Source: Octopus sinensis
Lineage: Eukaryota
Assembly (NCBI RefSeq): GCF_006345805.1
Contig: NC_042998.1
Coordinates: 3,844,001-3,908,000, forward strand
Direction: 5' to 3'
Length of the DNA: 64,000 bases
Shown: positions 7,311 to 55,121 of the stretch, one piece after another
Position numbering within the stretch: position 1 is the first letter of the stretch
Layout of the letters: each line of letters begins with the position of its first letter
Notes under the pieces: generated by a model
What the model was told of the DNA's origin: nothing
The model's database searches: none
The model's input: only the letters and a program-made list of their open reading frames with translations
Made by a program: the position numbers and the translations under genes

Positions 7311-7449
7311 GGTGATGAATGAAAGGACATGGATTAGGCTTGTGTGATTAATTGTGGTGATAGAAGTAATGTTGGTGTTGATGTGGGATTAAATACGGTA
7401 GTGGTCAAGATGGTGGATTAGAGGAATCTGTTAAGCTGGCACATTAAAT

Positions 7450-19520: not shown

Positions 19521-19564
19521 CATATTTGTATGTCATTCTTTATTAGTTTGAAAGTTTGAATAAT

Positions 19565-20234: not shown

Positions 20235-20688
20235 TTAATGTGCAGGTGGCTGAGGGTGGCACGTAAAAAGTACCATCCGATTGTGGCTGTTTGCCAGCCT
20301 CGTCCGGCCCCTGTGCCGGTGGCACGTAAAAAGCACCATCCGATTGTGGCCATTTGCCAGCCTCATCCGGCCCCTGTGCTGGTGGCACGTAAAAAGCATC
20401 ATCCGATCGTGGCCGTTGCCAGCCTCGTCCGGCCCCTGTGCCGGTGGCACGTAAAAAGCACCATCCAATCGTGGCCGTTTGCCAGCCTCATCTGGCCCCT
20501 GTGCCGGTGGAACGTAAAAAGCACCCACTACACTCACGGAGTGGTTGGCATTAGGAAGGGCATCCAGCTGTAGAAACACTGCCAGATCAGACTGGGCCTG
20601 GTGCAGCCTTCTGGCTTCCCAGACCGCAGTTGAATCGTCCAACCCATGCTAGCATGGAAACGGACGTTAAACGATGATGATGATGATG
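20235..20688 (+). mobile_element. RTE 3'-UTR fragment with a 63-bp tandem expansion
   Basis: Unit starts at 20255, 20318, 20381, 20443 and 20506, then the terminal region and a (GAT)n tail. Confidence 0.8.
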
Positions 20689-28174: not shown

Positions 28175-28605
28175 TTCAAATTTTGGCACAAAGCCAGCAA
28201 TTTTAAGGATTTTAAGGGATAGGGAGGCTAGATGATTACATCAACCCCAGTGCTCAACTGGTACTTATTTTATCAATCTCAAAAGGATGAAAGGCAATGT
28301 CATCCTTGGTATAATTTGAACTCAGAATGTAAGGTGCTGGATGAAATGCTGCTAAATAATTTATCCAGTGTACAACCTTAATAATAATGATTTCAAATTT
28401 TGGCAGAAGGCCAGTAAGTTTAGGGAAGGGAAGGAGTCAATTACATCAACTCCAATTCTCAACTGGTACTCATTTTATTGACCCCAAAAGGAGGAAAGGC
28501 AAAGTGGATATTGGTGGAATTTGAACTCAGAATGTAAAGACAGATGAAATTCCACAAAGCATTTTGCTTGGCGTTTTAATGATTCTGTCAGCTTGCTGCC
28601 TTAAT
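28175..28605 (-). mobile_element. Two older SINE B-type copies in tandem
   Basis: Two degenerate matches (GAACTCAGAATGTAA...TTCATCCTTT in the reverse sense). Confidence 0.7.
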
Positions 28606-29028: not shown

Positions 29029-29639
29029 TGGCCCAAATCTTTTCCTTTTTTTTTATTTTCAATTAGTTTTTGTCACAGATTTATTGCAAAAAAATTGGTG
29101 AAAAATATTTAAAAAGTTAAAATATAAAATTGAAAAAAAAAAAAAAATCAAACTTAAATTTCAAAAATATATGATATTCACTATATCACAGACAAAATGT
29201 GAACAAAAAATTGAAAACATTGGAAAGAAAAATAAAACAATTGACTAAATCATTTTAGGATGCAAAACGGAAAAGGAAAAAAAAAGAAAAATGTCTATTT
29301 ATAGAAACATTGCTAAAGTAAATGTCATGTCAAAAATAAGTTAAATATTGGAGAAAAATATGGAGGAAAAAAAAATGAGAAAGGACTCCAGTAACGGACT
29401 CCATTTTGGAGCAATCCAGATATGAACACTAAAATACATATGCATCATACATATGTATTTAAACATGTTTTCTCATGTGTGTGTGGGTATAAGATATCTA
29501 TAATATATATATATCATATGTATGATATATCATGTGTATGATATATATCATACATGTGTATAATATATATGATATGTGTATGATATATATGTATATAGTA
29601 TATATCATAATATATATATAATATATTTATATACACATA

Positions 29640-30010
29640 TATATACTATATACAAATAGATTTGATATATATATATATATACCTACATATATATGTACAT
29701 TTGATATATATATACATACATATATATGTACATTTGATATATATATATATACATACATGTGTACATTTGATATATATATACACATAATACAGACATTTGA
29801 TATATATATACATATAATACATAGACATTTGATAATATATATATACACACACATACATTTGATATGTATATATACGTATATATATATATATTTATATACA
29901 CATATATATATACATTTAATATATTCACACATATATATATATACATACACACATTTGATATATATATATTTGCACACACACATTTGATATATATATATAT
30001 ATACACACAC
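29640..30010. repeat. CATTTGA(TA)n compound minisatellite
   Basis: Recurrent CATTTGATATATATA anchors. Confidence 0.85.
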
Positions 30011-30597
30011 ACAGCTAGTTGCCTGCATCCAGTAAAAGAATGTGTATAATATACACATTCACTCACATATTATATTTTATATATATATCAATATATATAT
30101 ATATAAGTCTTTGTTTTACATTTAATTTTATTTTGTCGACATGCATTTCGCACTGTATTAACACAACAATATATACAGTAAGCATGCTCTGGCACTCTAT
30201 CCAGCATTGGTATATGGGTGTCACTCTCTTTTGCTCCCTATGTATTGCCTCACATTTATCTCACATTTTCCTTTCTTTTATTATTGAAATTGTTTTTGAT
30301 ACTATTAATGCTGTTGTCATTATTATTTTTAGTCATTATAATTATTATCATAATTATTATTATTATTATTATTAGACATGTGATGGTTCAGAATCAGTAA
30401 TGTGCTGGATAAATATGCTTTGCAATACACAGTTATGTCTCAATGCTTTTATATCTTTGGACACTGTTGTTGAAACTTGCCTTTCGTACTTGTGCTTCTA
30501 GTACTGGGGTTAAATAAACTGGCTACACCCGCCTCTTTGAAATTTGTGGTTTTAGACAACATGAAAGAAATTATTATAATTACTGTTATTATTATTT

Positions 30598-30790: not shown

Positions 30791-32699
30791 CAATCATTAT
30801 TATTATTATTATTATCAAATATATGTTTGGCTTTTGCTTTGTACAAGTTAACTTGAAGTCTCAGCCAGAGAGCTCAATTTAGAAATTCAAGTTGGTGTTA
30901 TGACTAGGGAGCCATATTTTTGGTTTTGCTCAAAGTATTGTTCTAGGGAATGTCTGTAAAAACATAAGACAATTAGAAGTTTCTTCTAAAAAGTAATTTT
31001 ATTATAAGATGATAGAGTGATATTAAAGTTACAGTATTATATTAAAATTCCACCAAGGTCAACTTTGCCTTTCATCCTTTTGGGAGTCAATGAAATAGGT
31101 ACCAATTATGCACTGGGGTCGATGTAATCGACTAGCATCCTTCCCCAGAATTTCAGGCCTTGTGTCTAGAGTTGAATTACTATTATTCATTGCTATTAGA
31201 TTGATGGCCTTGATTGTGTTAGTGAAGTTATACCGAGTGGTTTACCTGATCCAAAGTTTGACAGCTTTGCAGGTTTAAGCTTAAATTGTTTTGAATTTTC
31301 ATTCTGCCAAGCTGTATTATATTTAAGTCAGTCCTATATGCTACAAGCTTACATGCGTAATTTTACTTTATGGTTTTTGTCTAAAGAGAACAATCCTGAT
31401 ACAATCATCCTTATATTCACCATAACTTTTTTTGAACACTGCTAACTTAGCACAAAGTGGCTTTGAAAATAACCATAACATGTATGATATATAACTTGAA
31501 AGTTGCAAAATATTCTCATTGATTTTAAGAAAGCATCAATACAACAACTAAAATATTGATAATTGTCCACTTAGAGCTTGAAATAACATATCAAGTAGAA
31601 TAATGTCTATGAGAAACTAAAAGAAGACAAAATGAAAGAAAAAAGATGATGTGATGTCTCTCAAGTATGCACACATGTATAAATACGTATAAACTCAGAG
31701 AAACAGTTGAAGATATAACGATATCAAAATAAATATACCTAAAGCCATGAGCAAACTAATCTAAAGACTACGTTTACAAACAGATTTGTAAAATGCACAG
31801 ACACTTGCGAGCATTGACAAAATGCTCACACAGACAAGTTTCAATACTCAAAGAAACTCATTGAAAATATGCTATAGAAATATCATTACTATATGTACAA
31901 AAATATTGGCTGGTGCACTGTAGAAATATGAAAATGTGTTTAGCCATCCATGAAGGAAGGAAATGATCAGAGCAATGTTCAGACAATCAAATGGCTAGAA
32001 TCACCCAGAGACCAATAAAATGTCTACAACTATCAACAAATCAATGAAATGTTTACTACCATCAAATTGTTGTTATTATTAATAGCCCTGTTACATCATT
32101 CGAGGCTAGGTCTTTGAATTCACTTGTGTAATATTACTGGCAATAACACCTACCAATTCTTTTAATTGTAATTCAGCTTTTTTGGGTAAAACAAATCTGT
32201 TTTTGTATGTGTGTGAATATATATGAATATATATATGTGTGTGTGTGTAGGTTTATATTTTCTGCTAGAACATAAAAAAAAGAACATTACAAGTGAGTTG
32301 CTTAACAGTCTTTAAAATAATGTCAAAACCAACAAAGAATTGACGTTTTAAGTCATAAACCAAGGGAATATTTACGAACTTCAATAGACCAATGAAATGC
32401 CACCTTTGATTGATCAATCAACTGTTTCCAATGTTTGACGAGCTAAAGAAATGTTTAGAACCACAAAATGATGAATAAAACATCATCAGTCTATGTGTCT
32501 AGTCAGGAAGGACCATTATTCTCCACTGCTCTGGTTTACTTGTTTGTTTCAAGAGGAATGGTTTAAAGAGATTCAACAATATTAGTAAACTCTTTGATTC
32601 AGTACAGGTGCAATTGAATGAAATAACTATATATATACGTACACACACACACACACACATACATCTACATATATACAATTATATACATACACTATATAT

Positions 32700-33055
32700 A
32701 TATACATATATATATATACACATATATACTTATATACATTCATTATATATATATACGTATATACTTATACATTCATTATATATATATATACACGTATATA
32801 CTTATATACATTCATTATATATATATACGTATATACTTATACATTCATTATATATATATACACGTATATACTTATATACATTCATTATATATATATATAT
32901 ATATTTACACATGTATATACTTATATACATTCATTACATATATATACACACGTATATACTTATATACATTCATTATATATATATATACACACGTATATAC
33001 TTATATACATTCATTATATATATATATACACACATATATACTTATATACATTCAT
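32700..33055. repeat. About 37-40-bp TA-rich minisatellite
   Basis: Unit ACGTATATACTTATATACATTCATTA(TA)n repeated about 8-9 times. Confidence 0.9.
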
Positions 33056-33495
33056 AATATATAAATGAAAAGAAAATGGAGATTTACAATTGACACATTT
33101 TAATTTATTAACATATATTATTACTACTACTATTATTATTATATAGCATAAAAATTATAATCCTACAATTGTTTCAATTCAGCCCTAATCATCACACACA
33201 GACATACACACACACGTATGCATGTATTAATAGCAAAATTAGCACCTAATACAATTGTGGCAAGAATATAATCTTCTGGTGGATGACTGACTGCTTTAGT
33301 TGTGGCCATATAACACAGCAGCAACTGGTGATGTTGCTATGGAACTGAATACATCCATAACAAGAGACATTGTATTCCTGAAGTAGAACTTTTAACTGAT
33401 GGCGAAAATTACAAAAAATTTGACAAAGCAGTTGCTACAATACATTACTGTCTTGCAAATAAATAGCTATGATATTGTCATTAAATATATCCCTG

Positions 33496-36400
33496 TTATT
33501 ATTATTATGCTTATTATTATTATTATTATTATTCGTATTATTATTATGCTTATTATTATTGTTATTCATATTATTATGCTTATTATTATTCGTATCATTA
33601 TGCTTATTATTATTATTCGTATCATTATGCTTATTATTATTATTCGTATCATTATGCTTATTATTATTATTGTTATTCATATTATGCTTATTATTAATAT
33701 TATTCGTATTATCATTATGCTTATTATTATTATTATTCGTATTATTATTATGCTTATTATTATTCGTATTATTATGCTTATTATTATTATTCGTATTATA
33801 CTTATTATTCATATTATTATGCTTATTGTTATTCATATTATTATGCTTATTATTATTATTCGTATTATTATTATGCTTATTATTATTATTCATATTATTA
33901 TGCTTATTATTATGCTTATTATTCATATTATGCTTATTATTATTCGTATTATACTTATTATTCATATTATTATGCTTATTATTATTATTCGTATCATTAT
34001 GCTTATTATTATTATTCGTATTATTATTATGCTTATTATTATTCGTATTATACTTATTATTATTCGTATCATTATGCTTATTATTAATATTATTCGTATT
34101 ATGCTTATTATTCGTATTATACTTATTATTCATATTATTATGCTTATTATTATTATTCGTATTATGCTTATTATTCATATTATTATGCTTATTATTATGC
34201 TTATTATTATGCTTATTATTATGCTTATTATTATTCGTATTATTATGCTTATTATTCGTATTATGCTTATTATTATTCATATTATTATGCTTATTATTAT
34301 GCTTATTATTCGTATTATTATGCTTATTATTCGTATTATTATGCTTATTATTATTATCGTATTATGCTTATTATTATTCATATTATTATGCTTATTATGC
34401 TTATTATTATTCGTATTATGCTTATTCGTATTATGCTTATTATTCACATTATTATGCTTATTATTATTCGTATTATTATTATGCTTATTATTATTATTCG
34501 TATTATGCTTATTATTATTCATATTATTATGCTTATTATTATGCTTATTATTATTATTCGTATTATGCTTATTATTCATATTATTATGCTTATTATTATT
34601 CGTATTATTATTATGCTTATTATTATTATTCGTATTATGCTTATTATTATGCTTATTATTCGAATTATTATTATTATGCTTATTATTCGTATTATGCTTA
34701 TTATTATGCTTATTATTATTCGTATTATGCTTATTCGTATTATGCTTATTATTCACATTATTATGCTTATTATTATTCGTATTATTATTATGCTTATTAT
34801 TATTATTCGTATTATGCTTATTATTATTCATATTATTATGCTTATTATTATGCTTATTATTATTATTCGTATTATGCTTATTATTATGCTTATTATTCGA
34901 ATTATTATTATTATGCTTATTATTCGTATTATGCTTATTATGCTTATTATTCGTATTATTATTCGTATCATTATGCTTATTATAATTGTTATTCATATTA
35001 TTATGCTTATTATTATTATTATTTCGTATCATGCTTATTATTATTCATATTATTATGCTTATTATCATGCTTATTATTATTCATATTATTATGCTTATTA
35101 TTATGCTTATTATTATTCGTATTATTATTCGTATCATTATGCTTATTATTATAATTGTTATTCATATTATGCTTATTATTATTATTCGTATCATTATTAT
35201 TATTCGTTATTCGTATCATTATGCTTATTATTATTCATATTAGTATGCTTATTATTATTATTGATATTATTATTCGTATTAAGCTTATTATTATTATTCG
35301 TATTATTATTATGCTTATTGTTATTCATATTATTATGCTTATTATTATTCGTATTATTATGCTTATTTTTCTTATTGTGCTTATTCTTATGCTTCTCCTT
35401 ATTGTGCTTATTCTTATGGTTATTACTATGCTTCTTATTATGCGTCTTCTTATTGTCATGTTGCTTCTTATCGTTATGCTTCTTCTTATGCTTCTTATTG
35501 TCATGTTGCTTCTTATCGTTATGCTTCTTATTGTTATGCTTCTTCTTATGCTTCTTATTGTTATGATTCTTATTGTTATGCTTCTCCTTATGCTTATTAT
35601 TATGCTTCTTAATGAGAAGAAGCATAACAATAAGAAGCATAAAAATAAGAATAAAGCATAAGAAATAGTATAAAAAGAAGCATAACAATAATAAGAGGCA
35701 TAATAATAATAATCATAATAATATTGAGAAGCATAATAGGAAGCATAAGAAGCATAATAAGAATAATAATACCCCAAAAAATAATAAGTATAATGATAAT
35801 AAGCATAATAAGAATCATAAGAAGCATAATAATAAGCATAACAATAAGAAGCTTAATAATAAGCATAATAATCATTATAATAATAAGCATAAGAGGAAGC
35901 ATAATAAGAAAAAGCATAACAATAAGAAGCATAACAATAATCTTATTGTTATGCTTCTTCTGAATGTTATGCTTCTTATTATAATGCTGCTTCTTATGCT
36001 TATTATTATACTTATAATGCTTTTTCTTATTATGGTTATTATTTTTATGCTACTTATTATTATGCGTCTTCTAAGAAGAAGCATCATAATAATAAGCAGC
36101 ATAACAATAAGAAGCATAATCAGAAGCATAACAAATAGTATAAGCATAAAAATAACCATAAGAAGCATAACAATAAAAAGAATAAGTATAAAAAGAAGCA
36201 TAAGAAGTATAATAATAATAAGCATAACAATATTAAGAAGCATAACAATAAGAAGCATAAGAAAAAGCATAAAAAGAAGCATAACAATAACAAAAAGCAT
36301 AAGAAGCATACAATAAGAAAAGGCATGATAATAAGCACAATTAGAAGAACCATAAGAAGAAGCATAAGAAAAAGCAGAACGATAAGAAGCATAACAATAA

Positions 36401-39400
36401 GAAGCATTATAATAATTACCATAACAATAATAGGAAGCATAATAATAAGAAAAAGCATAATAATAAAAAGAATCATAACAATAATAATAAAAAGAATCAT
36501 AAGAAGCATTATAAGAAGCATAACAATGATGAAGCATAATAATAAGTATAACAATAAGAAGCATAATAATAAGGAACATCACAATAAGAAGCATAACAAG
36601 AAAAGAAGCATAACAATAAGAAAAAGCATAAGAAAAAGCATAACAATAAAAGAAGCATAATAATAAGCATAATAAACATCACAATAAGAAGCATAAGAAG
36701 TACAATAAGATGCATAACAATGAGAAGCACAATAATAATAAACATAAGTAGCATATTAATAAGAAGCATAACATTAAGAAGCATAACAATAAGAATTATA
36801 ACAAGATGAAGCATAATAATAAGCATAACAATAAGCATGACAATAAGAAACAATAAAAAGAATAACCATAAAAAGAAGCATAACAATGAGATGAAGCATT
36901 ATAATAAGTATAACAATAAGAAGCATAAGAAAAGAGGCATCACAATAAGAAGCATAATAAGAAGCATAATAATAAGCATAACAATAAGAAGCATTATACT
37001 AATATGAAGCATAACAATAAGATGCATAATAAAAATAAGCATAATAATAATAAGTATAATAATAAGCATAATAAAAAGCATAACAAGAAGGAACACTATA
37101 AGAAGAGCATAACAAAAAGAAGCATAACAATAAGAAGCATAATAAGGAACATCACAATAAGAAGCATAACAAGAAAAGAAGCATAACAATAAGAACCATA
37201 ACAATAAGAAGCATAATAATAATAAGCATAACAATAAGAAGCATTATAATAATTACCATAACAATAATAGGAAGCATAATAATAAGAAAAAGCATAATAA
37301 AAAGAATCATAACAATAATAAAAAGAATCATAAGAAGCATTATAAGAAGCATAACAATGATGAAGCATAATAATAGTAAGTATAACAATAAGAAGCATAA
37401 CAAGAAGGAACACTATAAGAAGAGCATAACAAAAAGAAGCATAACAATAAGAAGAAGCATAATAATAATAAGCATAACAATAAGAAGCATAATAATAATA
37501 AGGAACATCACAATAAGTATAACAAGAAAAGAAGCATAACAATAAGAACCATAACAATAAGAAGCATAATAAGAAGCATAATAATAATAAGCATAACAAT
37601 AAGAAGCATAATAATAATAAGGAACATCACAATAAGAAGCATAACAAGAAAAGAAGCATAACAATAAGAACCATAACAATAAGAAGCATAACAATAAGAA
37701 AAAGCATAAGAAAAAGCATAACAATAAAAGAAGCATAATAATAAGCATAATAAACATCACAATAAGAAGCATAAGTACAATAAGATGCATAACAATGAGA
37801 AGCACAATAATAATAAACATAATAAGTAGCATATTAATAAGAAGCATAACATTAAGAAGCATAAAAAGAATAACCATAAAAAGAAGCATAACAATGAGAT
37901 GAAGCATTATAATAATAAGTATAACAATAAGAAGCATAAGAAAAGAGGCATCACAATAAGAAGCATAACCATAAGAAGCATAATAAGAAGCATAATAATA
38001 ATAAGCATCACAATAAGAAGCATAACAATAAGAAGCATTATACTAATATGAAGCATAACAATAAGATGCATAATAAAAATAAGCATAATAATAATAAGTA
38101 TAATAATAAGCATAATAAAAAGCATAAGAAGCATAACAAGAAGGAACACTATAAGAAGAGCATAACAAAAAGAAGCATAACAATAAGAAGAAGCATAATA
38201 ATAATAAGCATAACAATAAGAAGCATAATAATAAGGAACATCACAATAAGAAGCATAACAAGAAAAGAAGCATAACAGTAAGAACCATAACAATAAGAAG
38301 CATAACAATAAGAAGCATAATAATAATAAGCATAACAATAAGAAGCATAATAAGGAACATCACAATAAGAAGCATAACAAGAAAAGAAGCATAACAATAA
38401 AAGCATAATAAGAAGCATAACAATAAGAAAAAGCATAAGAAAAAGCATAACAATAAAGAAGCATAATAATAAGCATAATAAAAAGCATAATAAGAAGCAT
38501 AACAAGAAGTACAACAAGATGCATAACAATGAGAAGCACAATAATAATAAACATAATAAGTAGCATATTAATAAGAAGCATAACATTAAGAAGCATAAAA
38601 AGAATAACCATAAAAAGAAGCATAACAATGAGATGAAGCATTATAATAATAAGTATAACAATAAGAAGCATAAGAAAAGAGGCATCACAATAAGAAGCAT
38701 AACCATAAGAAGCATAATAAGAAGCATAATAATAATAAGCATCACAATAAGAAGCATAACAAGAAGCATTATACTAATATGAAGCATAATAAGATGCATA
38801 ATAAAAATAAGCATAATAATAATAAGTATAATAATAAGCATAATAAAAAGCATAATAAGAAGCATAACAAGAAGGAACACTATAAGAAGAGCATAACAAA
38901 AAGAAGCATAACAAAAAGAAGCATAACAATAAGAAGCATAACAATAAGAAGCATAATAATAATAAGCATAACAATAAGAAGCATAATAATAAGGAACATC
39001 ACAATAAGAAGCATAACAAGAAAAGAAGCATAACAGTAAGAACCATAACAATAAGAAGCATAACAATAAGAAGCATAATAATAATAAGCATAACAATAAG
39101 AAGCATAATAAGGAACATCACAATAAGAAGCATAACAAGAAAAGAAGCATAACAATAAGAACCATAATAAGAAGCATAACAATAAGAAAAAGCATAAGAA
39201 AAAGCATAACAATAAAAGAAGCATAATAATAAGCATAATAAACATCACAATAAGAAGCATAAGAAGTACAATAAGATGCATAACAATGAGAAGCACAATA
39301 ATAATAAACATAATAAGTAGCATATTAATAAGAAGCATAACATTAAGAAGCATAACAATAAGAATTATAACAAGATGAAGCATAATAATAAGCATAACAA

Positions 39401-42400
39401 TAAGAAGCATGACAATAAGAAGAAATAAAAAGAATAACCATAAAAAGAAGCATAACAATGAGATGAAGCATTATAATAATAAGTATAACAATAAGAAGCA
39501 TAACAAGAAAAGAAGCATCAGCATAAGAATCATAATAAGAAGCATAACAATAAGAAGCATAAGAAACATCACAATAAGAAGCATAACAAGAAGTACAACA
39601 AGATGCATAACAATGAGAAGAAGCACAATAATAATAAGCATAAGAAGCATAACAATAAGAAGCATAATAATATGAAGCATAACAATAAGTAGCATAACAA
39701 TAATACGAAGCTTAACACAAGAAGCATAATAAAATGTGGCATAACAATAAGAAGCATATTAATTATAAGAAGCATAATAATAATAAGCATAACAGTAAGA
39801 AGTAGCATAAAAATAAGCTTAATAATAATAATAAGAAGCATAACAAGATGCATAACAATAAGAAGATGCATGAAAATAAGCATAACAATAAGATGTGGCA
39901 TAACAATAAGAATATTAATAAGTAGCATAACAATCCGAAGCATAACAATAAGAAACATCACAATAAGAAGCATAACAAGTACAACAAGAAGATGCATAAC
40001 AATAAGAAGCATAATAAGAAGCATCATACTGAGAAGCATAATAATAATAATCATAAGATGCATAACAATAAGAATCATAACAATAAGATAAAGCATAATA
40101 ATAAAGAGCATAATAATAATAAGCATAACATTAAGAAGCATAATAATAATAAGAAGCATAACAATAAGAAGCATAATAATTATAAGAAGCATAACAAGAA
40201 GAATCATAATAATTAGAAGAAGCATAAGACGCATAATAATAATAACCATAATAATAATAAGAAGCATAACAATAAGAAGAATCATAATAAGATGCATAAC
40301 AATAAGAAGCATAAGAAGAATCATAATAATTAGAAGAAGCATAAGACGCATAATAATAATAACCATAATAATAATAAGAAGCATAACAATAAGAAGAATC
40401 ATAATAAGAAGATGCATAACAATAAGCATAACAATGAGAAGAAGCATAAAAAATAAGATGTGGCATAACAATAAGAAGAATAACAATCAGAAGAAGCATA
40501 ATAAGAAACATAATAAAAAGAATAACCATAAAAAGCATAACAATGAGATGAAGCATTATAATAATAAGTATAACAATAAGAAGCATAAGAAAAGAGGCAT
40601 CACAATAAGAAGCATAACCATAAGAAGCATAATAAGAAGCACAATAAGAAGCATAACAATAAGAAGCATTATACTAATATGAAGCATAACAATAAGATGC
40701 ATAATAAAAATAAGCATAATAATAATAAGTATAATAATAAGCATAATAAAAAGCATAATAAGAAGCATAACAAGAAGGAACACTATAAGAAGAGCATAAC
40801 AAAAAGAAGCATAACAATAAGAAGCATAACAATAAGAAGCATAACAATAAGAAGAAGCATAATAAGCATAACAATAAGAAGCATAATAATAATAAGGAAC
40901 ATCACAATAAGAAGCATAACAAGAAGAAGTACAAGTAGAAGATGCATAACAATGAGAAGCACAATAATAATAATAAACATAAAGAAACATAACAATAAGA
41001 TGAAGCGTAATAAGAAACATAATAAGAAGTAGCATAACAATAAGAAGCATAATAATAATAAGCATAACAATCAGAAAAAGCATAACAATAATACGAAGCT
41101 TAACATAATAAGAAGCATAACAATAAAAAGTGGCATAACAATAAGAAGCATATTAATAACAAGAAGCATGAAAATACGAAGAAGCATAACAATAAGAAGC
41201 ATAATAATAATAAGAACCATAATAAGCATAACAATAAGATGTGGCATAACAATAAAAAGGAGCATATTAATAAGAAGAAGCATAACAAGAAGAGGTACAA
41301 CAAGAAGAAGCATAACAATAAGAAGAATTATAACAATAAGAAGAAGCATATAAGAAGAAGCATAACATTAAGAAGAAGCATTATAAACATAAGAAGCATA
41401 ACAATAAGAAGCATAACAATTAGAATCATAACAATAAGAAGCATAATAATAAGAAGCATAACAATAAGATGAAGCGTAATAAGAAACATAACAAGAACTA
41501 GCATAATAATAAGAAGCATAATAATAATAAGAAGCATAATAAGAAACATAATAAGAAGTAGAATAACAATAATAAGAAGCTTAGCATAAGAAGCATATTA
41601 ATAACAAGATGCATGACAATAAGACGAAGCTTAACAATAAGATGCATGACAATAAGCATAACAATAAGAAGCATAATAATAAGATGTGGCATAACAATAA
41701 GAAGCATATTAATAATAAGAAGCATGATAATAAGATGCATAACTAATAGGCATAACAATAAGAAGCATAAGAATAAATGTGGCATAACAATAAGAAGCAT
41801 AATAAGAAGCATAACAATAAGCATAACAATAAGAAGAAGCATATAAATAATAAGAAGCATGGCAATAAGAAGAAGCATAACAATAAGAAGATGCATAATA
41901 ATAAGCATAACTAAGAAGAAGCATAACAATAAGATGTGGCATAACAATAGGAAGAAGCATATTAATAAGAAAAAGCATAACAATCAGAAGCATAACAATA
42001 AGAAACATCACAATAAGAAGCATAACAAGAAGAACAATAAGAATTATAACAATAAGAAGAAGCATATTAATAAGAAGCATAACATTATGAAGAAGCATAA
42101 TAATAAGAAGCATAATAAGAAGGAGCATAATAATAATAAGAAGCATAACATTAAGAAGTAGCATAACAATAAGAAGAAGCATAATAATAATAAGTATATA
42201 AGAAGCATAACAATAAGAAGGAACACTATAACAAGAGCATAGCAAAAAGCATAACAATAAGAATCATAACAATAAGAAGAAGCATAATAATAATAAGCAT
42301 AATAATAATAAGAAACATCACAATAAGAAGCATAACAAGAAGAAGAAATACAACAAGAAGAAGATGCATAACAATAAGAAGCACAATAATAATAATAAAC

Positions 42401-45400
42401 ATAAGAAGCATAACAATTAGAAGCATAACAATTAGAATCATAACAATAAGAAGAATTATAACAATAAGGAGAAGCATAACATTAAGAAGAAGCATAATAA
42501 TAAGAAGCATAACAATAAGATGAAGCGTAATAAGAAACATAATTAGAAGTAGCATAACAATAAGAAGCATAATAATAATAAGAATAATAATAAGAATCAT
42601 AAGAATAAGAAGTAGCATAACAATAATACGAAGCTTAACATAAGAAGAAGCATAACAGTAAGGAGAAGCATAACATTAAGAAGCATAAGAAGCATGACAA
42701 TAAGAAGAAGCATAACATTAAGAAGCATAATAATAATAAGAAGCATAATATTAATAAGAAGCATAACAATAAGAAGTAGCATAACAATAATAAGCTTAAT
42801 AATAATAAGAAGCATAACAATAGGAAGAAGCATAATAACAAGAAGAAGCATAACAATAAGATGTGGCATAACAATAAGAGGCATATTAATAATAAGAAGC
42901 ATGACAATAAGAAGAAGCATAACAATAAGATGCATAAGAATAAGAAGATACATGACAATAAGCATCACAATAAGAAGCATAATAAGATGTGGCATAACAA
43001 TAAGAAGCATATTAATAATAAGAAGCATGACAATAAGAAGAGGCATAACAATAAGAAGATGCATAACAATAAGAAGATGCATAACAATAAGAAGATACAT
43101 GACAATAAGCATCACAATAAGAAGCATAATAAGATGTGGCATAACAATAAGAGGCATATTAATAATAAGAAGCATGACAATAAGAAGAAGCATAACAATA
43201 AGAAGATGCATAAGAATAAGAAGATACATGACAATAAGCATCACAATAAGAAGCATAATAAGATGTGGCATAACAATAAGAGGCATATTAATAATAGGAA
43301 GCATGACAATAAGAAGAGGCATAACAATAAGAAGATGCATAGCAATAAGAAGAGGCATAGCAATAAAAAGCATAACAATAAGATGTGGCATAACAATAAG
43401 CATAACAATCAGAAAAAGCATAATAAGAAGATGCATAACAATAAGCATAACAATAAGAAGAAGCATAATAATAAATTGTGGCATAACAATAAGAAGCATA
43501 TAAATAATAAGAAGCATGACAATAAGAAGCATAACAACAAGAAACATCACAATGAGAAGAAGCATAACAAGAAGAAGTACAACAAGAAGATGCATAACAA
43601 TAAGAAGAATTATAACAATAAGAAGAAGCATATTAATAAGAAGAAGCATAACATTAAGAAGAAGCATACTAATAAGAAGCATAATAATAAACATAATAAG
43701 AAGCATAACAATAAGAAGAAGCATAACAATTAGAATCATAATAATAAGAATTATAACAATAAGAAGCATAACAATCAGAAGCATAACAATCAGAAGCATA
43801 ACAACAAGAAACATCACAATGAGAAGAAGCATAACAAGAAGAAGAAGTACAACAAGAAGAAGCATAACAATAAGTAGATGCATAACAATGAGAAGATGCA
43901 TAACAATTAGCATAACTAAGAAGAAGCATAACAATAAGATGTGGCATAACAATAAGAAGAAGCATATTAATAATAAGAGGCATAACAATCAGAAGCATAA
44001 CAACAAGAAACATCACAATGAGAAGAAGCATAACAAGAAGAAGAAGTACAACAAGAAGAAGCATAACAATAAGAAGAATTATAACAATAAGAAGAAGCAT
44101 AACAATTAGCATAACTAAGAAGAAGCATAACAATAAGATGTGGCATAACAATAAGAAGAAGCATATTAATAATAAGAAGCATAACAATCAGAAGCATAAC
44201 AACAAGAAACATCACAATGAGAAGAAGCATAACAAGAAGTACAAGAAGATGCATAACAATAAGAAGAATTAAAACAATAAGAAGAAGCATATTAATAAGA
44301 AGCATAACATTAAGAAGAAGCATAATAATAAACATAATAAGAAGCATAACAATAAGAAGAAGCATAACAATTAGAATCATAACAATAAGAATTATAACAA
44401 TAAGAAGCATATTATTAAGAAGAAGCATAATAACAAGCATAACAATAAGTAGATGCATAACAATGAGAAGATGCATAACAATTAGCATAACTAAGAAGAA
44501 GCATAACAATAAGAAGAAGCATAACAATTAGAATCATAACAATAAGAATTATAACAATAAGAAGCATATTATTAAGAAGAAGCATAATAATAAGAAGCAT
44601 AACGATCAGAAGCATAACAACAAGAAACATCACAATAAGAAGCATAACAAGAAGAAGACGTACAACAAGAAGCATAACAATAAGAAGAATTATAACAATA
44701 AGAAGAAGCATAACAATTAGCATAACTATGAAGAAGCATAACAATAAGATGTGGCATAAGAATAAGAAGAAGCATAATAATAAACATAATAAGAAGCATA
44801 ACAGTAAGAAGCATAACAATTAGAATCATAACAATAAGAATTATAACAATAAGAAGCATATTATTAAGAAGAAGCATAAGAAGAAGCATAATAATAAGCA
44901 TAACAATAAGAAGCATAACAATAAGAAGCATAATAATAAGAAGCATAACAATAAGAAGCATAATAATAAGCATAACAATAAGAAGAAGTATAATAATAAG
45001 AAGCATAACAATAAGAAGAAGCATAATAAGCAGAAGCATAATAATAAGAAGACGCATAATAATAATAACCATAATAATAATAAGAAGCATAACAATAAGA
45101 AGAATCATAACAATAATAAGAAGCATAATAATAAGAAGTATAATAATAAGAAATATAATAAGAAGCATAATAATAAGAAGAAGCATAACAATAAGAACCA
45201 TAATAACAAGAAGAAGCATAACAATAAGAACCATAATAACAAGAAGAAGCATAACAATAAGATGTGGCATAACAATAAGAAGAAGCATAACAATAAGAAG
45301 AAGCATAACAATAAGAAGCATGACAATAAGAAGAAGCATAATAATAATAAGCAAAATAATAAGCATAACAATAAGTAGAAGCATAATAATAATAAGAAGC

Positions 45401-46845
45401 ATAACAATAAGCATAATAATAAGCTTCTTATTGTTATGCTTCTTATTATGGTTATTATTATTATTATGCTTATTCTTATTGTTATGCTTCTTATTGTTAT
45501 GCTTCTTATTAATATATTTCTAATTGTTATGCTTCTTATTGTTATGCTTCTTATTAATATATTTCTAATTGTTATGCTTCTTATTATTATGGTTCTTATT
45601 GTTATGCATCTTCTTATTGTTATGCTTCTTATGCTTATTATCATTATGCTTCTTATTATGCATCTTATTATTCTTATTATTATGCTTCTTGTTATACTTA
45701 TGCTTCTTATTGTTATGCTTCTTATGCTTTTCATTATTATGCTTCTTATTATGCTGCTTATTGTTATGCATCTTATTATTGTTATGCATCTTATTATTGT
45801 TATGCTTCTTATTGTTATACTTATCATTATGCTTATTATAATTCTTTTAATTGTGCTTATTATTATTATGCTTGTTATTTTTATGCTTCTTATTATGCTT
45901 TTTCTTATTATGCTCCTTATTGTTATGCTTATTATTATGATGTTTCTTATTGTTATGCTTCTTATTATGCTTCTTATTATCATTATGCTTATTCTTATGG
46001 TTATTATTATGCTTCTTATGCTTCTTATTTTTATGCTTCCTCTTATACTTCTTATTGTTATGCTACTTCTGATTGTTATGCTTCTTATTGTTATTCTTAT
46101 TATGCTTCTTATTGTTATGCTTCTTATTATCATTATGCTTATTCTTATGGTTATTATTATGCTTCTTATTGTTATGCTTCTTATTGTTATTCTTATGCTT
46201 CTTATTGTTATGCTTCTTATTATCATTATGTTTATTCTTATGGTTATTATTATGCTTCTTATTGTTATGCTTCTTATTGTTATTCTTATTATGCTTCTTA
46301 TTTTTATGCTTCTTATTATCATTATGCTTATTCTTATGGTTATTATTATGCTTCTTATTGTTATGCTTCTTATTGTTATTCTTATTATGCTTCTTATTGT
46401 TATGCTTCTTATTATCATTATGCTTATTCTTATGGTTATTATTATGCTTCTTATTGTTATGCTTCTTATTGTTATTCTTACTATGCTTCTTATTGTTATG
46501 CTTCTTATTATCATTATGCTTATTCTTATGGTTATTATTATACTTCTTATTGTTATGCTTCTTATTGTTATTCTTATTATGCTTCTTATTGTTATGCTTC
46601 TTATTATCATTATGCTTATTCTTATGGTTATTATTATGCTTCTTATTGTTATGCTTCTTATGTTTTTTCTTATTTTTATGCTCCTTATTGTTATGCTTCT
46701 TATGCTTCTTATAGTTATTATCATTATCCTTCTACTTATTGTTTTGCTTCTTATTGTTATGGTTCTTATTGTTATGCTTATTATGCTTCCTATTGTTATG
46801 CTTCTTATTATGCTTTGTATTATTATGCTTATTCTTCTTATTATA
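33496..46845. repeat. 13.3-kb compound satellite of AAGCAT/AAT/AAC/AAG words with internal inversions and higher-order repeats
   Basis: Directly visible: the units are (AAG)AAGCAT(AAC)(AAT)n and AAGCAT(AAT)nACG. Orientation switches near 35612, 35941, 36073 and 45423. Confidence 0.97.
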
Positions 46846-47061: not shown

Positions 47062-47599
47062 CTAAAGTATATGAAGTGGTGGGAGGGGAAATGATTTCTC
47101 TGACTAAGAGACTGATTAATGGCAGATTTACCTCTTACCTCAAGTTAAACACGACCAACTTGACTGCCACATGTAAGCAGTGAAAATGGCAAAACTGACA
47201 AATATTGGAACAGCAATCACAACACTAACAACAATAACTATAGAAAAAACAGCAACTGTAGCAGCAACAACAACATGGCAACAGTAATAACAACAGCAGC
47301 AACAAATTGACAGTAGCAAAGCAACAATAATAATGACAAGAAGGTAAGTGGTGGGTGTGATTCCATGTGTAGAAAGTATTTTGCTGGGAATGTGGTAAAG
47401 TGAATAAAAATACTTCACATTCATTCTTATAAGAATCATGCCTAATCAGGTAGAAAAACTTGTGAAAGGAAAAGGGAAGAAAGCTAAGATGAGATTTTGG
47501 CAACAGCTGCCTGGAAAATGGTGCTGTATTACTGTGCATTGGTAAACATTTGATGCCTAAAAATAGCAACATACACCCAAGTGGAATGAGCCTTCAAAG

Positions 47600-48060
47600 A
47601 TATATGGGCAGATATTGAACATGTGACTAAAACAAGGTAGTTAGGGAGCATGGAGGTTCTCTTCTAGAGAAAAACCCTCACATTGAAGCACTCAATAGCT
47701 CTCAAACACAATAGAGAGCTTATCTTCTATCCAACATATTCAGGATGACGGACCTCTTGCCTTAAGATGAAAATATTTCTACCAGGGCTAGCCATCTTGA
47801 GGCTGTTAGCCTGTGTTGTATTGAAAGGCAGCAACACCTTCCTTGACATTAAATGAGCTGAGGAGTTTTAACTTAAGACCACACTGAAGGTCCTTCTAAT
47901 CAAACTGGATGATGTGGAGAAAAGTAACAGACTTCATTGACATGCCCAATAGATTGGAAATATGTGTTGTAGTTGAGGGTAGAAGGCCAAGATGTCACTT
48001 CTGTGGTGCAGAAAACTATAAGAACATTCTGCGCTAAACAGAAAAAGGGAAGAGGAAGCC
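47600..48060 (+). mobile_element. Degenerate LINE ORF1 (gag-like zinc knuckle) remnant
   Basis: TDFIDMPNRLEICVVVEGRRPRCHFCGAEN then, after a frameshift, IRTFC: a decayed CX2CX4HX4C knuckle preceded by the V.VEGR.P motif. Confidence 0.4.
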
Positions 48061-49203
48061 CCTGCTGCTGCCAACACCACAGCAGCAAAGAGAACATGAG
48101 CAATGGCAGCAGTACCAACAACACAAACAATTACTGTTGCTGCAGTGTCTTCAATAATGGCAGCAATATCAAACACCAGAAGCATGTCTAGTAACAACAA
48201 CAACACTAACAATAGGACCAAAACCCACAACTCAGGATAATTTCCAACCTAACTCCCTCTTTATTACTCTCCTTCACAACCCTTTTTTCAAGTACAAAGT
48301 GACATAGATACACATGAAAACACAACTCCACATATCACTGCAGTGGATCTTTTTGATATGGAAATCTTATCTTGTGAGAAAGAGAAACAACAAAAAAATT
48401 AATAATGATAATAAATAAAACCCACACCAGCATGAAAAGATGCAAATCAACCTCGAACAGAACTGATAATTTATTCGTCAATCCCAAAATGATGGAAGAT
48501 GAAGTTAAGTTTAGTAGGATTTGAACTCAGGATGCAAAGAACCTGAACAATCTTCCCAATATTCTGATTCTGCCAACTGGCTGCTGCCTTTTAATGCTTG
48601 GCTGACAGAATCAGTAAAGTCATCACCATCCAGTGTTTTAAATCTGGGTTTTGTCCCTGTTAATGAGGGTGGCCGAATCTACCTCAATGCCATAGCAACC
48701 AAGGAAGGTAGGTGCAGCCCACCCCGAACTTTGGGCTGGATGGTGCCCATTCTCCTATGCTATCATGAGGCGTTTTTGGAGCTAGATTTTCTATGGGTAG
48801 CATGCCCTTGCTTATCCCCAACTTCAATTTCTAGACATGAGTGGTCGTGAGACCAAGGCCTCTACCACGATTTTTAAGAAATGTGGTGGAAAACTAGTTC
48901 AGGAACGCAGGGACACAACTCTCTGACACCCCTTTCAGAGCCCCCATACCTACACAATACTTTCGATATTTATTTTATGTTCTGAGTTCCAGTCCTGCTG
49001 GTGGGGGTCTTTTTAATTGACTTCCAAGCTTTAAAACTTGTAGCTTTCTGTCAATTTTAAAAGTCATTAGGACAGAAAGAGAACTATATCGGCAGTTTCA
49101 TTGAAATATATGCATTGCAATATTTAGTTATGGAGCTTTACAGTCAATTCAAATCTCACAGAGATTGACTTTATTCATTATCTTTCTGGTTGAGTAAATA
49201 AAA

Positions 49204-50904: not shown

Positions 50905-51400
50905 CATTGTTAGCACGCTGGGCGAAATGCTTAGCAGCATTTTGTCCATCTCTACGTTCTGAGTTCAAATTCCGCCGAGGTCGACTTTGCCTTTCATCCT
51001 TTCGGGGTCGATTAAATAAGTATCAGTTACGCACTGGGGTCGATATAATTGACTTAATCCGTTTGTCTGTCCTTGTTTGTCCCCTCTGTGTGTAGCCCCT
51101 TGTGGGTAGTAAAGAAATAGGTATTTCGTCTGCCATTACATTCTGAGTTCAAATTCCGTCGAGGTCGACTTTGCCTTTCATCCTTTCGGGGTCAATTAAA
51201 TAAGTACCAGTTACGCACTGGGGTCAATATAATTGACTTAATACGTTTGTCCCCTCTGTGTGTAGCCCCTTGTGGGCAGTAAAGAAATAGGTATTTCCCC
51301 CATTGCTATGTACTGAGCTCAAATGTTGCCAAGGTCGACTTTGCTTTTCATCCTTTTGGGGTCGATAAATTAAGTACCAGTGAAACACTAGCATCTATGA
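50905..51400 (+). mobile_element. Head-to-tail trimer of SINE B units
   Basis: Three successive GAGTTCAAATTCC...CTTTCATCCTTT units, joined where the tail AAAGAAATAGGTATTTC runs into an internal GGTATTTC site. Confidence 0.8.
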
Positions 51401-51539
51401 AATCAACTAGTCCTCTCCCTACAAATTTCAGGATTATTCTCTCTAAGGTTGCGAGCTGGCAGATTTATTAGCATGTGTGACAAAATGCTTAGTAGCATAT
51501 TTTCTTGCCTTTTGCGTTCTGAGTTCAAGTTCCACTGCG

Positions 51540-53310: not shown

Positions 53311-53665
53311 ATTTCTTTACTACCCACAAGGGGCTAAACATAGAGGGGACAAACAAGTACAGACAAACAGATTAAGTCGATTACATCGACCCCAGTGCGT
53401 AACTGGCACTTAATTTATTGACCCCGAAAGAATGAAAGGTAAAGTCGACCTCGGCTGAATTTGAACTCAGAACGCAGCGGCGGATTAAATACCACAAAGC
53501 ATTTCGCCTGGTGTGCTAACGATTCTGCCAGCTCGCCGCCTTTAAAAGGATGAAAGGCAAAGTCAACCTTGGCAGAATTTGAACTCAGAATGTGATAGAC
53601 GGATGAAATCTCGCTAAGCATTTTGCCTGACATGATAACAATTCTGCCAGCTCACCACATCTCAA
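53311..53665 (-). mobile_element. Dimeric SINE B (old head plus young full copy) with one TSD
   Basis: 17-bp direct repeat GGATTCAATAAATACCT at 53294-53310 and 53666-53682 flanks both heads. Confidence 0.75.
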
Positions 53666-54282: not shown

Positions 54283-54804
54283 TCTCAGAACTTTTAGTGT
54301 CTGACAAAATGCTTTGTAATTTTTATTCTGTTACTATGGCAGCAAGTGGCAGAATTGTTTGCATGTCAGGCAAAATGCTTGTCAGTATTTCACTGAGGTC
54401 AACTTTGTGTTTCATCCTTTAGAGGGTCATTAAAATAAGTACCAGTTAACCACTTGGGCTGATGTAATAGACTTAGCCCCACTCCTGAAATTGCTGGCCT
54501 TGCGCCAAAATTTGAAACCAATATTTGTTCTATCTCTTTGTGTTCCCTTCAAATCTTATTGAAGTTAACTTTACCTTTCATTCTCATGGAATTGATAAAA
54601 TGAAACAGAAATCAAGATTTAATCAACCAACACTTACACCTAAATTTCTGACCTTCTGCCTGTATAATAAATTTAATTGATTATTTTCTGCCCCATACAT
54701 TTTTAGCTTAGTGCTTATGAGAAAATTGATTATCATTTTCATAACTGAAAGGCAGAAATAGTTGAACAATACAAAAATACCTTATATTTCTCCTTTCTCA
54801 TAAG

Positions 54805-55121
54805 CAGAAAGTGTAACCTCTCGAAAGAGCTGTTCTTCACTCCTGCTCCAGATCGTCAGCTGCGGGATCACTCTGAAAAGCTCTATCTGCGACGATTTCA
54901 TCTCAATCGAAGGAGAGGGGCTTTCTCCGTCCGGGTTGCGGATCCGTGGAATAAGCTGCCGGACGAGATAGTGAAGATGCCGATGACTGCTCGGTTCAAA
55001 GTCTCCCTTGACCACAAATGACCTGAACTCTTTGCATGAACACCGCCCTGTACATAACTCCATGTCCCCCTACATGGCCTTGCTTTTTGCTTTTTGAGCC
55101 AAAAAATTAACTTAACTTAAC
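54805..55121 (+). mobile_element. 3' end of a CR1-clade LINE
   Basis: ELFFTPAPDRQLRDHSEKLYLRRFHLNRRRGAFSVRVADPWNKLPDEIVKMPMTARFKVSLDHK* is the canonical CR1 ORF2 C-terminus (RGH..KL, FS.RV...WN.LP, FK..LD), followed by an (AACTT)n tail. Confidence 0.9.

What the first reader, a model, noticed from the sequence alone, without database searches (positions are those of the whole stretch)
33496..46845. 13.3-kb satellite written almost entirely in triplet words, with alternating orientation blocks
Seen: the array is assembled from a tiny vocabulary (AAGCAT anchor plus AAT, AAC, AAG, ACG). Most length variation is therefore in multiples of 3, and stop-free frames run 300-600 codons. It has a T-rich left arm (33496-35610), a mainly A-rich 9.8-kb core (35613-45423) and a T-rich right arm (45424-46845). 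Inference: this resembles iterative slippage or templated synthesis plus strand switching more than ordinary unequal crossover. Any transcript through it could form kilobase dsRNA between arms and core. That would be a large ADAR or small-RNA substrate in a lineage with established extensive A-to-I editing. It could also act as a heterochromatin seed or fragile site just downstream of a gene end.
Basis: partly seen in the sequence, partly recalled or inferred. Interest (0 to 1): 0.7.

Follow-up and report, generated by a model that had tools for sequence, protein, structure and literature searches.

The report
Triplet-word AT-rich satellite with inverted blocks
This is a real but ordinary 13.3-kb stretch of non-coding satellite DNA that grew out of an AAT-type trinucleotide repeat by 3-base slippage, block duplication and a few inversions, and nothing in the sequence shows that it has a function.

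Summary
Window 33496-46845 is one uninterrupted 13,350-bp tandem array. It has five orientation blocks: (-)33496-35611, (+)35613-35940, (-)35941-36070, (+)36071-45423, (-)45424-46845. Five triplet words (AAT, AAG, CAT, AAC, ACG) cover 84-91% of it, against about 45% in shuffles. 92.5% of GCAT-anchor spacings are multiples of 3. Stop-free runs of 460-580 codons exist, but they follow trivially from the vocabulary.

- Triplet slippage is supported. Between recently duplicated copies, 60 of 80 indels are multiples of 3.
- Ordinary block duplication also acts. Higher-order repeats of 96, ~270 and ~750 bp are 93-98% identical.
- Only one junction (35940/35941) shows fold-back mirror symmetry.
- The arms are 72-78% complementary to the core, not exact copies. 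A read-through RNA would fold into a long imperfect hairpin (right arm plus core). The main left arm pairs poorly.
- Transcription, editing, lineage and genome-wide abundance cannot be tested with these tools.
- No gene end was found nearby. The flanks hold SINEs, transposon fossils and microsatellites.
- The frame shifts 45 times in the core, so it is not coding.

Closest known: simple-sequence-derived satellites such as human HSat2/3, with higher-order repeats, domains and inversions. Low interest.

The parts
33496..35353 (-). Left-arm domain of 'L-type' units. Read on the A-rich (minus) strand these are AAG CAT (AAT)n ACG/ATG (AAT)n, with 12/24/27-nt spacing. GC is 16%. It is the most diverged domain.
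   Evidence: TRF periods 12 and 27. Words: AAT 57-60%, ACG 7-8%. Internal duplications are only 83-86% identical. CpG o/e is 4.09 because ACG is a repeat word, and 34 ACG against 20 ATG occupy the same unit position.
35354..35611 (-). Core-type units (AAG-rich) in inverted orientation. This is the end of the left arm.
   Evidence: Sequence. TRF periods 15/27/42/45. Word shift to AAG 30%.
35602..35625 (.). Junction J1: ATGCTTCTT / AATGAG / AAGAAGCAT, 9-nt perfect arms with a 6-nt spacer. No mirror symmetry beyond that.
   Evidence: The ssDNA hairpin is -17.9 kcal/mol, z = -6.7.
35613..35940 (+). Short forward block of core-type units.
   Evidence: 15 forward anchors. TRF period 15.
35941..36070 (-). 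130-bp inverted block, a diverged mirror copy (~80% identical) of the ~120 bp immediately to its left (35819-35940). Junction J2 at 35940/35941 is a spacer-less 17/18-nt palindrome.
   Evidence: Mirror alignment 35943-36070 against 35940-35819 is 80.5% identical. Mirror score 71 against background 54.2 +/- 4.3, 0 of 85. Hairpin -25.5 kcal/mol, z = -10.5.
36071..45423 (+). Main core of 9.35 kb. The consensus unit is CAT AAC AAT AAG AAG (15 nt, dimer 30 nt), with 12- and 18-nt variants. 201 distinct unit types fill 459 intervals. The triplet phase shifts 45 times.
   Evidence: TRF periods 15/30, scores 5014/5863. Unit census. Phase runs and spacing. Stops are evenly spread over the three plus-strand frames: 483/383/400.
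37388..39355 (+). Higher-order repeat of ~740-760 bp inside the core (about 2.6 copies). Further partial copies lie at 36603-36976 and 40513-40925.
   Evidence: 37388-38353 against 38124-39081 is 93.2% over 983 bp. 38159-38598 against 38920-39355 is 96.8%.
42855..43366 (+). Local higher-order repeats of ~130-145 and ~273 bp. This region carries the ATG TGG word variant.
   Evidence: 42855-43090 against 43128-43366 is 96.7%. Offsets of 129/144/273 bp. Unit CAT AAC AAT AAG ATG TGG occurs 9 times.
45424..46845 (-). Right arm: core-type units inverted, in a single triplet phase across 1389 bp. Junction J4 sits at AAG|CTT (45423/45424).
   Evidence: 67 reverse anchors. 70 of 70 spacings are multiples of 3. 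Complementary to the core at 77-78% anywhere in the core, not specifically to the adjacent part. Mirror test z about 2.
46066..46703 (-). 96-bp (32-triplet) higher-order repeat. It is the youngest part of the array.
   Evidence: TRF period 96, 14.5 copies. Copies are 96-98% identical at offsets 96/189/285.

Best explanation
This is a non-coding, AT-rich (16-25% GC) complex satellite or minisatellite that descends from an (AAT)n-type trinucleotide microsatellite.

Proposed history:
1. Point mutations turned AAT into its one-step neighbours AAG, AAC and CAT, and into ACG in the left domain.
2. Composite 12-18-nt units such as CAT-AAC-AAT-AAG-AAG were then amplified.

Three processes shaped the array:
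1. Replication slippage in 3-base steps inside the short AAT/AAG runs. This keeps nearly all length variation in multiples of three. Shown.
2. Tandem duplication of larger blocks (96 bp, ~270 bp, ~750 bp) by unequal exchange or replication-based duplication. This gives local homogeneous domains. The duplications are shown; the exact mechanism is inferred.
3. A few orientation switches. At least one is a short fold-back copy (35941-36070). The mirror symmetry is shown; the template-switch mechanism is inferred.

The long open frames and the K/H/N-type 'peptides' are by-products of the vocabulary.

The array most likely has no sequence-specific function. Its consequences are structural: hairpin-prone junctions, and the capacity to form a long imperfect RNA hairpin if it is ever transcribed through.
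For: - Tandem structure and significance.
- Vocabulary coverage is 84-91% against ~45% in shuffles. The main words are single-step neighbours of AAT.
- 589 of 637 anchor spacings are multiples of 3.
- Since duplication, 60 of 80 indels are multiples of 3, and the indel-to-substitution ratio is 0.67.
- Higher-order repeats are 93-98% identical.
- Domains are graded by age: left arm 83-86%, core 93-97%, right-arm higher-order repeat 96-98%.
- There is no long-range reading frame. The core has 45 phase runs, and stops are spread evenly over its frames.
- Translated array pieces have no protein relatives.
- Six other, shorter triplet-word tracts with different vocabularies lie in the same window, and an (ATT)18 microsatellite lies 3 kb upstream. 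Trinucleotide-derived simple DNA is therefore a recurrent product here.
- There is no SINE in 13.35 kb although the flanks carry 13 copies per 50.6 kb (P about 0.03). This indicates expansion or turnover younger than the SINE burst.
- Precedent: large simple-sequence satellites with inversions, homology domains and higher-order repeats are documented in the human genome (PMC2588610, read).
Against: - No reads were available, so the assembled length and the inversions are unverified.
- No second copy of the family could be retrieved from any collection. 'Satellite' in the sense of a multi-locus genomic family is therefore unproven.
- The runs of identical triplets are short (mostly 1-3 copies in the core), near the lower limit at which slippage is usually thought efficient.
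- Counts of 3-bp indels between overlapping higher-order pairs are not fully independent.
- A function (RNA hairpin, protein-binding sink, chromatin seed) cannot be excluded from sequence alone.
Confidence: 0.8

Rival explanations
1. Assembly artefact. The length and/or the orientation switches come from mis-assembly of a low-complexity region, for example from fold-back chimeric long reads or mis-joined repeat contigs.
For: Long AT-rich arrays are among the hardest regions to assemble. No reads were available to check. All junctions are hairpin-like, which is also what a fold-back read would give.
Against: - A fold-back read artefact predicts near-identical mirror images over kilobases. J1 and J3 show no mirror symmetry, J4 only z about 2, and J2 only ~80% over 120 bp.
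- Each block has its own subfamily or higher-order repeat. The ACG word occurs only on the left, and the 96-bp repeat only on the right.
- The triplet phase is kept in 92.5% of intervals, and in 70 of 70 in the right arm. Uncorrected indel errors would destroy it.
Confidence: 0.1
2. Functional hairpin-RNA locus. Read-through transcription yields a long imperfect dsRNA (core plus right arm) that is hyper-edited by ADAR or diced into small RNAs, acting as an editing sink or a silencing source.
For: - A modelled transcript across 45423 folds into an almost continuous hairpin: -608.7 kcal/mol for 1400 nt.
- For 800 nt the value is -354 against -165 +/- 7 for shuffled halves, with five helices of 20 bp or more.
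- Oppositely oriented repeats are the general source of ADAR substrates across Metazoa, and octopus has an exceptionally high share of such loci (PMC5625713).
Against: - There is no evidence of transcription, no promoter or gene context, and no conservation data.
- Complementarity is generic at 72-78%. The 1.9-kb L-type arm pairs hardly better than shuffled sequence.
- The core outweighs the arms 9.4 kb to 1.4 kb, so most of it would stay single-stranded.
- By the cited study such repeat-derived dsRNA would be one of very many, so it would be unremarkable even if true.
- The lineage of the window could not be verified.
Confidence: 0.07
3. Protein-coding low-complexity exon or exons. The triplet periodicity reflects selection on a reading frame that encodes a Lys/His/Asn-rich (or Ile/Val/Met/Leu-rich) repeat protein.
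For: Strong period-3 structure. Open frames of 290-610 codons with ATG starts. The right arm keeps one phase for 1389 bp.
Against: - The core changes phase 45 times in 9.35 kb and has about 400-480 stops in every plus-strand frame.
- Orientation flips four times.
- Openness is a trivial consequence of the vocabulary and appears in several frames at once.
- The single phase of the right arm is explained by its young 96-bp higher-order repeat.
- No relatives were found in 5.8 billion proteins, nor by exact look-up.
- The same 3-bp indel bias is expected from slippage alone.
Confidence: 0.02
4. Templated synthesis. The array was written by a reverse-transcriptase- or telomerase-like activity copying a short template repeatedly, with strand switches.
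For: The short unit, tiny vocabulary and orientation switches are superficially compatible with it.
Against: - 201 unit types fill 459 intervals, and the commonest unit makes up only 9%. That is not what a fixed template gives.
- Nested higher-order repeats and domain structure point to duplication of existing DNA.
- No RT gene or template RNA is nearby. The only RT-like remnants are distant LINE fossils.
Confidence: 0.01

Closest known systems
Simple-sequence-derived satellites such as human satellites II/III, built from diverged CATTC/GAATG pentamer words
   Same: Arrays longer than 10 kb written in a few short words derived from one microsatellite motif. They show higher-order repeats, local homology domains and orientation inversions within the array (PMC2588610). 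The array here shows all three.
   Different: - The word length here is 3, not 5, so length variation comes in triplets and mimics coding periodicity.
- Only a single 13-kb locus was seen, against megabase multi-locus families.
- Chromosomal location and chromatin state are unknown.
Cryptically simple sequence (scrambled short motifs produced by slippage; concept of Tautz, Trick and Dover 1986, cited from my own knowledge)
   Same: A tiny motif vocabulary in scrambled order. Indels come in motif-sized steps. Several smaller examples lie in the same window.
   Different: Classic cryptically simple regions are tens to hundreds of bases long. This one has additionally been amplified into a 13-kb hierarchical tandem array.
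Expanded AT-rich minisatellites at rare fragile sites (human FRA16B 33-bp and FRA10B ~42-bp repeats; from my own knowledge)
   Same: An AT-rich (75-84% AT) minisatellite-scale unit expanded to more than 10 kb, with hairpin-prone sequence.
   Different: Fragility is a cytological phenotype not testable here. The units here are less AT-pure (longest AT-only run 23 nt) and strongly strand-asymmetric, so only the junctions are self-complementary, not the body.
Hairpin-RNA (hpRNA) endo-siRNA loci of Drosophila, and inverted-repeat ADAR substrates
   Same: Tandem repeats in inverted arrangement that could fold back as RNA. Repeats in opposite orientation are the usual ADAR substrates (PMC5625713).
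   Different: Known hpRNA loci are transcribed, have highly complementary arms and target specific genes. Here the arms are 72-78% complementary, their lengths are very unequal, and no transcription or target is known.

Membership tests
Satellite / minisatellite tandem array | Head-to-tail repetition of a unit over a long uninterrupted stretch | tested here: met
   TRF periods 12/15/27/30/96 over 33496-46841. The largest anchor gap is 88 bp.
Satellite / minisatellite tandem array | Local homogenisation and higher-order repeats | tested here: met
   Higher-order repeats of 96, ~270 and ~750 bp at 93-98% identity.
Satellite / minisatellite tandem array | The family is present at many loci or abundant in the genome | not testable with these tools
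   There are no copies outside the array in the 64-kb window. No eukaryotic genome collection is available. Scans of metagenome and prokaryote collections were empty.
Microsatellite-derived cryptically simple DNA | Sequence reducible to a few short motifs related by single substitutions | tested here: met
   Five triplet words cover 84-91% against ~45% in shuffles. AAG, AAC and CAT are one-step neighbours of AAT.
Microsatellite-derived cryptically simple DNA | Indels predominantly in multiples of the motif length | tested here: met
   589 of 637 spacings are multiples of 3. 60 of 80 post-duplication indels are multiples of 3.
Protein-coding repeat exon | One reading frame kept open over the whole feature | tested here: not met
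   45 phase shifts, and 383-483 stops in each plus-strand frame of the core.
Protein-coding repeat exon | Detectable protein relatives | tested here: not met
   No hit at E <= 0.001 among 8000 scored candidates. The exact sequences are absent from the collection. Caveat: the HMMER bias correction penalises low-complexity queries.
Fold-back (palindromic chimeric read) assembly artefact | Near-identical mirror images extending far from the junction | tested here: not met
   Mirror scores at J1 and J3 are at or below background. J4 is about 2 sd above background. J2 is ~80% identical over ~120 bp only.
hpRNA / ADAR dsRNA substrate locus | Inverted arms able to form a long RNA duplex | tested here: met
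   -354 kcal/mol per 800 nt across J4 against -165 +/- 7 for shuffled halves, with helices up to 34 bp. The L-type arm pairs poorly.
hpRNA / ADAR dsRNA substrate locus | Transcription through both arms, and A-to-G clusters or small RNAs mapping to them | not testable with these tools
   No RNA data are available. Rfam found nothing.
Fragile-site AT-rich minisatellite (FRA16B/FRA10B type) | Expanded AT-rich minisatellite with cytologically demonstrable breakage | not testable with these tools
   AT richness (GC 16-25%) and junction hairpins are present. The body of the array has no self-structure (z about 0). Fragility needs cytology.

The most novel reading that the evidence does not exclude
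The locus is transcribed through the core and the right arm in some tissue and folds into a hairpin of more than 1 kb, imperfect, with helices up to ~34 bp. This hairpin serves as a high-capacity ADAR substrate or sponge, or as an endo-siRNA/piRNA source. Triplet-step slippage would then let the two arms stay mutually complementary in any register. A lesser variant: the ~270 AACAAT motifs (core consensus of SOX/HMG-box sites, from my own knowledge) make the array a sink for an AT-hook or HMG-box protein.
Probability: 0.06. Interest if true: 0.5.

Novelty: new member of a known kind. Interest (0 to 1): 0.2.

Why it matters
As it stands it matters little. It is a clean example of how a trinucleotide microsatellite matures into a hierarchical satellite. 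It is also a caution for genome scans: period-3 structure and open frames of 500 codons can arise without any coding constraint.

It would matter more in three cases:
- RNA data showed that it is a transcribed hairpin in an animal with heavy A-to-I editing.
- Population long reads showed exceptional instability.
- The family turned out to mark a chromosomal landmark such as a centromere.

Tried and rejected
- Exact 24-mer (one degenerate position) scans of metagenome contigs and genome contigs returned 0 hits.
- A degenerate back-translated scan of metagenome contigs gave 37 pattern matches, none confirmed.
- A protein search with the 290-aa K/H/N-frame ORF scored 8000 word-sharing candidates, none significant. 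The low-complexity bias correction makes this search insensitive, so I did not repeat it with other frames.
- An exact look-up of five array ORFs and five flank ORFs found none in the collection.
- I tried to fix the taxon through a SINE-derived ORF (no hits) and through a literature search for SINE sequence strings (irrelevant hit).
- Pfam on 20 flank ORFs found only one DDE_3 transposase fossil. Rfam and ARAGORN on the whole window found nothing.
- The flanks were tested for direct or inverted homology, as a TE or duplication origin would predict. None was found above shuffles.
- Triplex-forming (GAA)n-like behaviour was considered and rejected. The longest purine run in the core is 12 nt.
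- Literature searches on cephalopod satellites and trinucleotide microsatellites gave nothing specific.
Full report
**1. What is there**

Window 33496-46845 is a single uninterrupted tandem array of 13,350 bp.
- TRF reports contiguous arrays with period 12/27 at 33496-35611, 15/30 at 36085-45423 (scores 5014 and 5863) and 15/96 at 45423-46841. Short arrays lie between them at 35617-35940 and 35941-36070.
- GC falls from 33-37% in the flanks to 16% in the left domain and 25% in the rest.
- With one mismatch allowed there are 323 matches against 0.05 expected from shuffles.
- The largest gap between GCAT/ATGC anchors is 88 bp and is still made of repeat words, so no foreign DNA is inserted.

**2. 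Orientation blocks**

Runs of AGCAT versus ATGCT anchors define five blocks:

| Block | Coordinates | Strand |
|---|---|---|
| Left arm | 33496-35611 | (-) |
| Short forward block | 35613-35940 | (+) |
| Short inverted block | 35941-36070 | (-) |
| Core | 36071-45423 | (+) |
| Right arm | 45424-46845 | (-) |

- The A/T counts flip in step with these blocks.
The 'core' contains one 130-bp inverted block.
- The left arm is not uniform.
  - 33496-35353 is a distinct AAT-rich subfamily carrying the ACG word.
  - Only its last ~260 bp (35354-35611) are core-type units.

**3. Triplet vocabulary**

I parsed the sequence from the CAT of each GCAT anchor.

| Domain | Main words | Sum |
|---|---|---|
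| Core | AAG 32.2%, AAT 23.4%, CAT 17.9%, AAC 10.5% | 84% |
| Right arm | same four words | 89% |
| Left arm | AAT 53.5%, AAG 16.6%, CAT 13.3%, ACG 6.5% | 90% |

- An optimal parse with the five words covers 91% of the left arm, 84% of the core and 89% of the right arm. Composition-matched shuffles give 43-46% and the flanks 26%.
- Anchor-to-anchor spacing is a multiple of 3 in 589 of 637 intervals. By block this is 84/87, 14/15, 6/6, 415/459 and 70/70.
- The array is nevertheless very heterogeneous. 201 different unit types fill 459 core intervals, and the commonest, CAT AAC AAT AAG AAG, accounts for only 43.

**4. The open frames are not evidence of coding**

- Stop-free runs of 552, 495, 492, 489, 579 and 463 codons exist.
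- They sit mainly on the T-rich strand. Its words (ATT, CTT, ATG, GTT) cannot spell TAA, TAG or TGA in any frame.
- On the A-rich strand two of the three frames of the consensus are open by construction.
- In the core the triplet phase shifts 45 times. The three plus-strand frames carry 483, 383 and 400 stops.
- The orientation also flips four times.
- A 290-aa translated piece found no relatives, and none of five array ORFs exists in the protein collection.
- Coding is rejected.

**5. How it grew**

*Triplet slippage.*
- I aligned twelve pairs of recently duplicated segments, so the differences are mutations that arose after duplication.
- They show 120 substitutions and 80 indels. 51 indels are exactly 3 bp and 60 are multiples of 3.
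- This indel rate and spectrum are what slippage in short AAT/AAG runs predicts.

*Block duplication.* A stringent self-comparison shows large direct duplications:
- 37388-38353 against 38124-39081 (93% over 983 bp), with related copies at offsets ~750, ~1500, ~1900 and ~2600;
- a 96-bp unit repeated across 46066-46703 at 96-98%;
- ~130/273-bp units at 42.9-43.4 kb;
- older 147/300-bp periodicities in the left arm at 83-86%.

This is the ordinary signature of unequal exchange or replication-based tandem duplication. The claim that the array looks unlike unequal crossover is therefore not supported. The identity gradient suggests that the left domain is oldest and the right-arm higher-order repeat youngest.

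*Word origin.* The main words are single-substitution neighbours of AAT. An independent (ATT)18 microsatellite lies 3 kb upstream. Six shorter triplet-word tracts with other vocabularies occur in the same window. The array is thus the amplified extreme of a common local process.

*Age.* The flanks carry 13 copies of one SINE per 50.6 kb, and the array carries none (P about 0.03). This argues that expansion or turnover is younger than the SINE burst.

**6. The inversions**

- All four junctions are short hairpins. Arm matches are 17-24 nt within 19-26-nt arms, counted with up to 2 mismatches. ssDNA folding energies are -18 to -25.5 kcal/mol with z of -6.7 to -10.5. The interior of the core has no structure, z about 0.
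- Any junction between oppositely oriented 15-nt repeats will look like this. I therefore tested for mirror symmetry beyond one unit.
  - J2 (35940/35941): significant, score 71 against 54.2 +/- 4.3, with 0 of 85 background windows as high.
  - J4: marginal, z about 2.
  - J1 and J3: none.
- So the 130-bp block 35941-36070 is a diverged fold-back copy of its left neighbour. This is consistent with a template switch.
- The origin of the large arms is not recoverable from sequence. Reverse-complemented, they match the core at 72-78% equally well anywhere, and the best near-exact inverted matches are at most 82 bp.
- The lack of mirror identity, the block-specific subfamilies and the preserved triplet phase argue against a fold-back-read assembly artefact. 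Length and order still need read support.

**7. dsRNA potential**

- A hypothetical transcript of 1400 nt centred on J4 folds into an almost continuous imperfect hairpin of -608.7 kcal/mol.
- For 800 nt the energy is -354 kcal/mol, against -165 +/- 7 when the two halves are shuffled separately. The longest helix is 34 bp and five helices reach 20 bp or more.
- Distant core and right-arm pieces pair as well (-336), so the register is free.
- The L-type arm pairs poorly with the core (-199, longest helix 16 bp), and the core alone is unstructured (-34).
- The physical premise therefore holds for about 1.4-1.8 kb of arm sequence, as an imperfect duplex.
- Whether any transcript exists cannot be tested here.
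- Oppositely oriented repeats are the general ADAR substrate across animals, and octopus has an unusually high fraction of dsRNA-forming loci (PMC5625713). Even if true, this locus would be one of very many.

**8. Surroundings**

No gene was found.
- Twenty flank ORFs gave one Pfam hit, a DDE_3 (Tc1/mariner-type) transposase fossil at 23137-23442.
- Rfam and ARAGORN found nothing.
- The flanks are full of SINE copies and (TA)n-rich microsatellites, with CpG o/e of 0.35.
- The left and right flanks are unrelated to each other.
- The 'gene end' and the cephalopod origin remain unverified.

**9. Comparison and verdict**

- The architecture is short words from one microsatellite motif, higher-order repeats, homology domains and inversions. 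It matches what is documented for large simple-sequence satellites in the human genome (PMC2588610), with a 3-nt word in place of a 5-nt word. It also matches the concept of cryptic simplicity.
- I file it as a new member of a known kind. Interest is low (0.2).
- The one reading that would raise interest is a transcribed hairpin locus. I give it about 6%.

Noticed in passing
window 6472-7432, 19045-19586, 21451-21692, 47129-47437, 47964-48281: Six shorter (240-670 bp) tracts have strong period-3 structure but other triplet vocabularies: ATG/GTG/GAT; ATC/ACC/ATT; AAC/AGC/GCA. Two of them lie 0.3-1.4 kb to the right of the array. Trinucleotide-derived cryptically simple DNA is recurrent in this window.
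   Followed up: partly
window 31042-31133 and at least 12 further copies (e.g. 11392-11478, 15865-15952, 28216-28522, 50964-51432, 53375-53580, 54387-54477): An abundant SINE-like element is present at 77-88% identity between copies. Some copies form short tandems: a 170-bp repeat at 51075-51381 and a 119-bp repeat at 53427-53653. None lies inside the 13.35-kb array.
   Followed up: partly
window 20255-20525: A GC-rich 63/125-bp tandem repeat (4.3 copies, 91% identity) lies in the only >45% GC kilobase of the window. It may be part of a composite SINE.
   Followed up: no
window 23137-23442 (-) and 23626-23925 (-): A Tc1/mariner-type transposase fossil. It gives a DDE_3 hit at E = 2.8e-9 and is broken into pieces.
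   Followed up: partly
window 4261-4515 (-) and 54749-55018 (+): Open frames whose translations look like LINE reverse-transcriptase and C-terminal remnants, by eye and from my own knowledge. No Pfam hit at E <= 0.01.
   Followed up: partly
window 32659-33063 and 29494-30003: Large degenerate (TA)n-based arrays with 41-bp and 33-bp higher-order units. The first ends 430 bp left of the satellite. An (ATT)18 microsatellite lies at 30319-30374.
   Followed up: no
window 33496-35353: In the L-type domain the word ACG alternates with ATG at the same unit position (34 against 20). That is the pattern expected from CpG deamination. CpG o/e is 4.09 here, 0.11 in the rest of the array and 0.35 in the flanks.
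   Followed up: partly
window 35470-46845 (core-type units): AACAAT occurs 268 times in the array (20 per kb against 1.3 per kb outside). From my own knowledge it is the core of SOX/SRY-type HMG-box sites. It may be a coincidence of the vocabulary.
   Followed up: no
window 18391-18617: An unrelated 39-bp tandem repeat, 5.8 copies at 89% identity.
   Followed up: no
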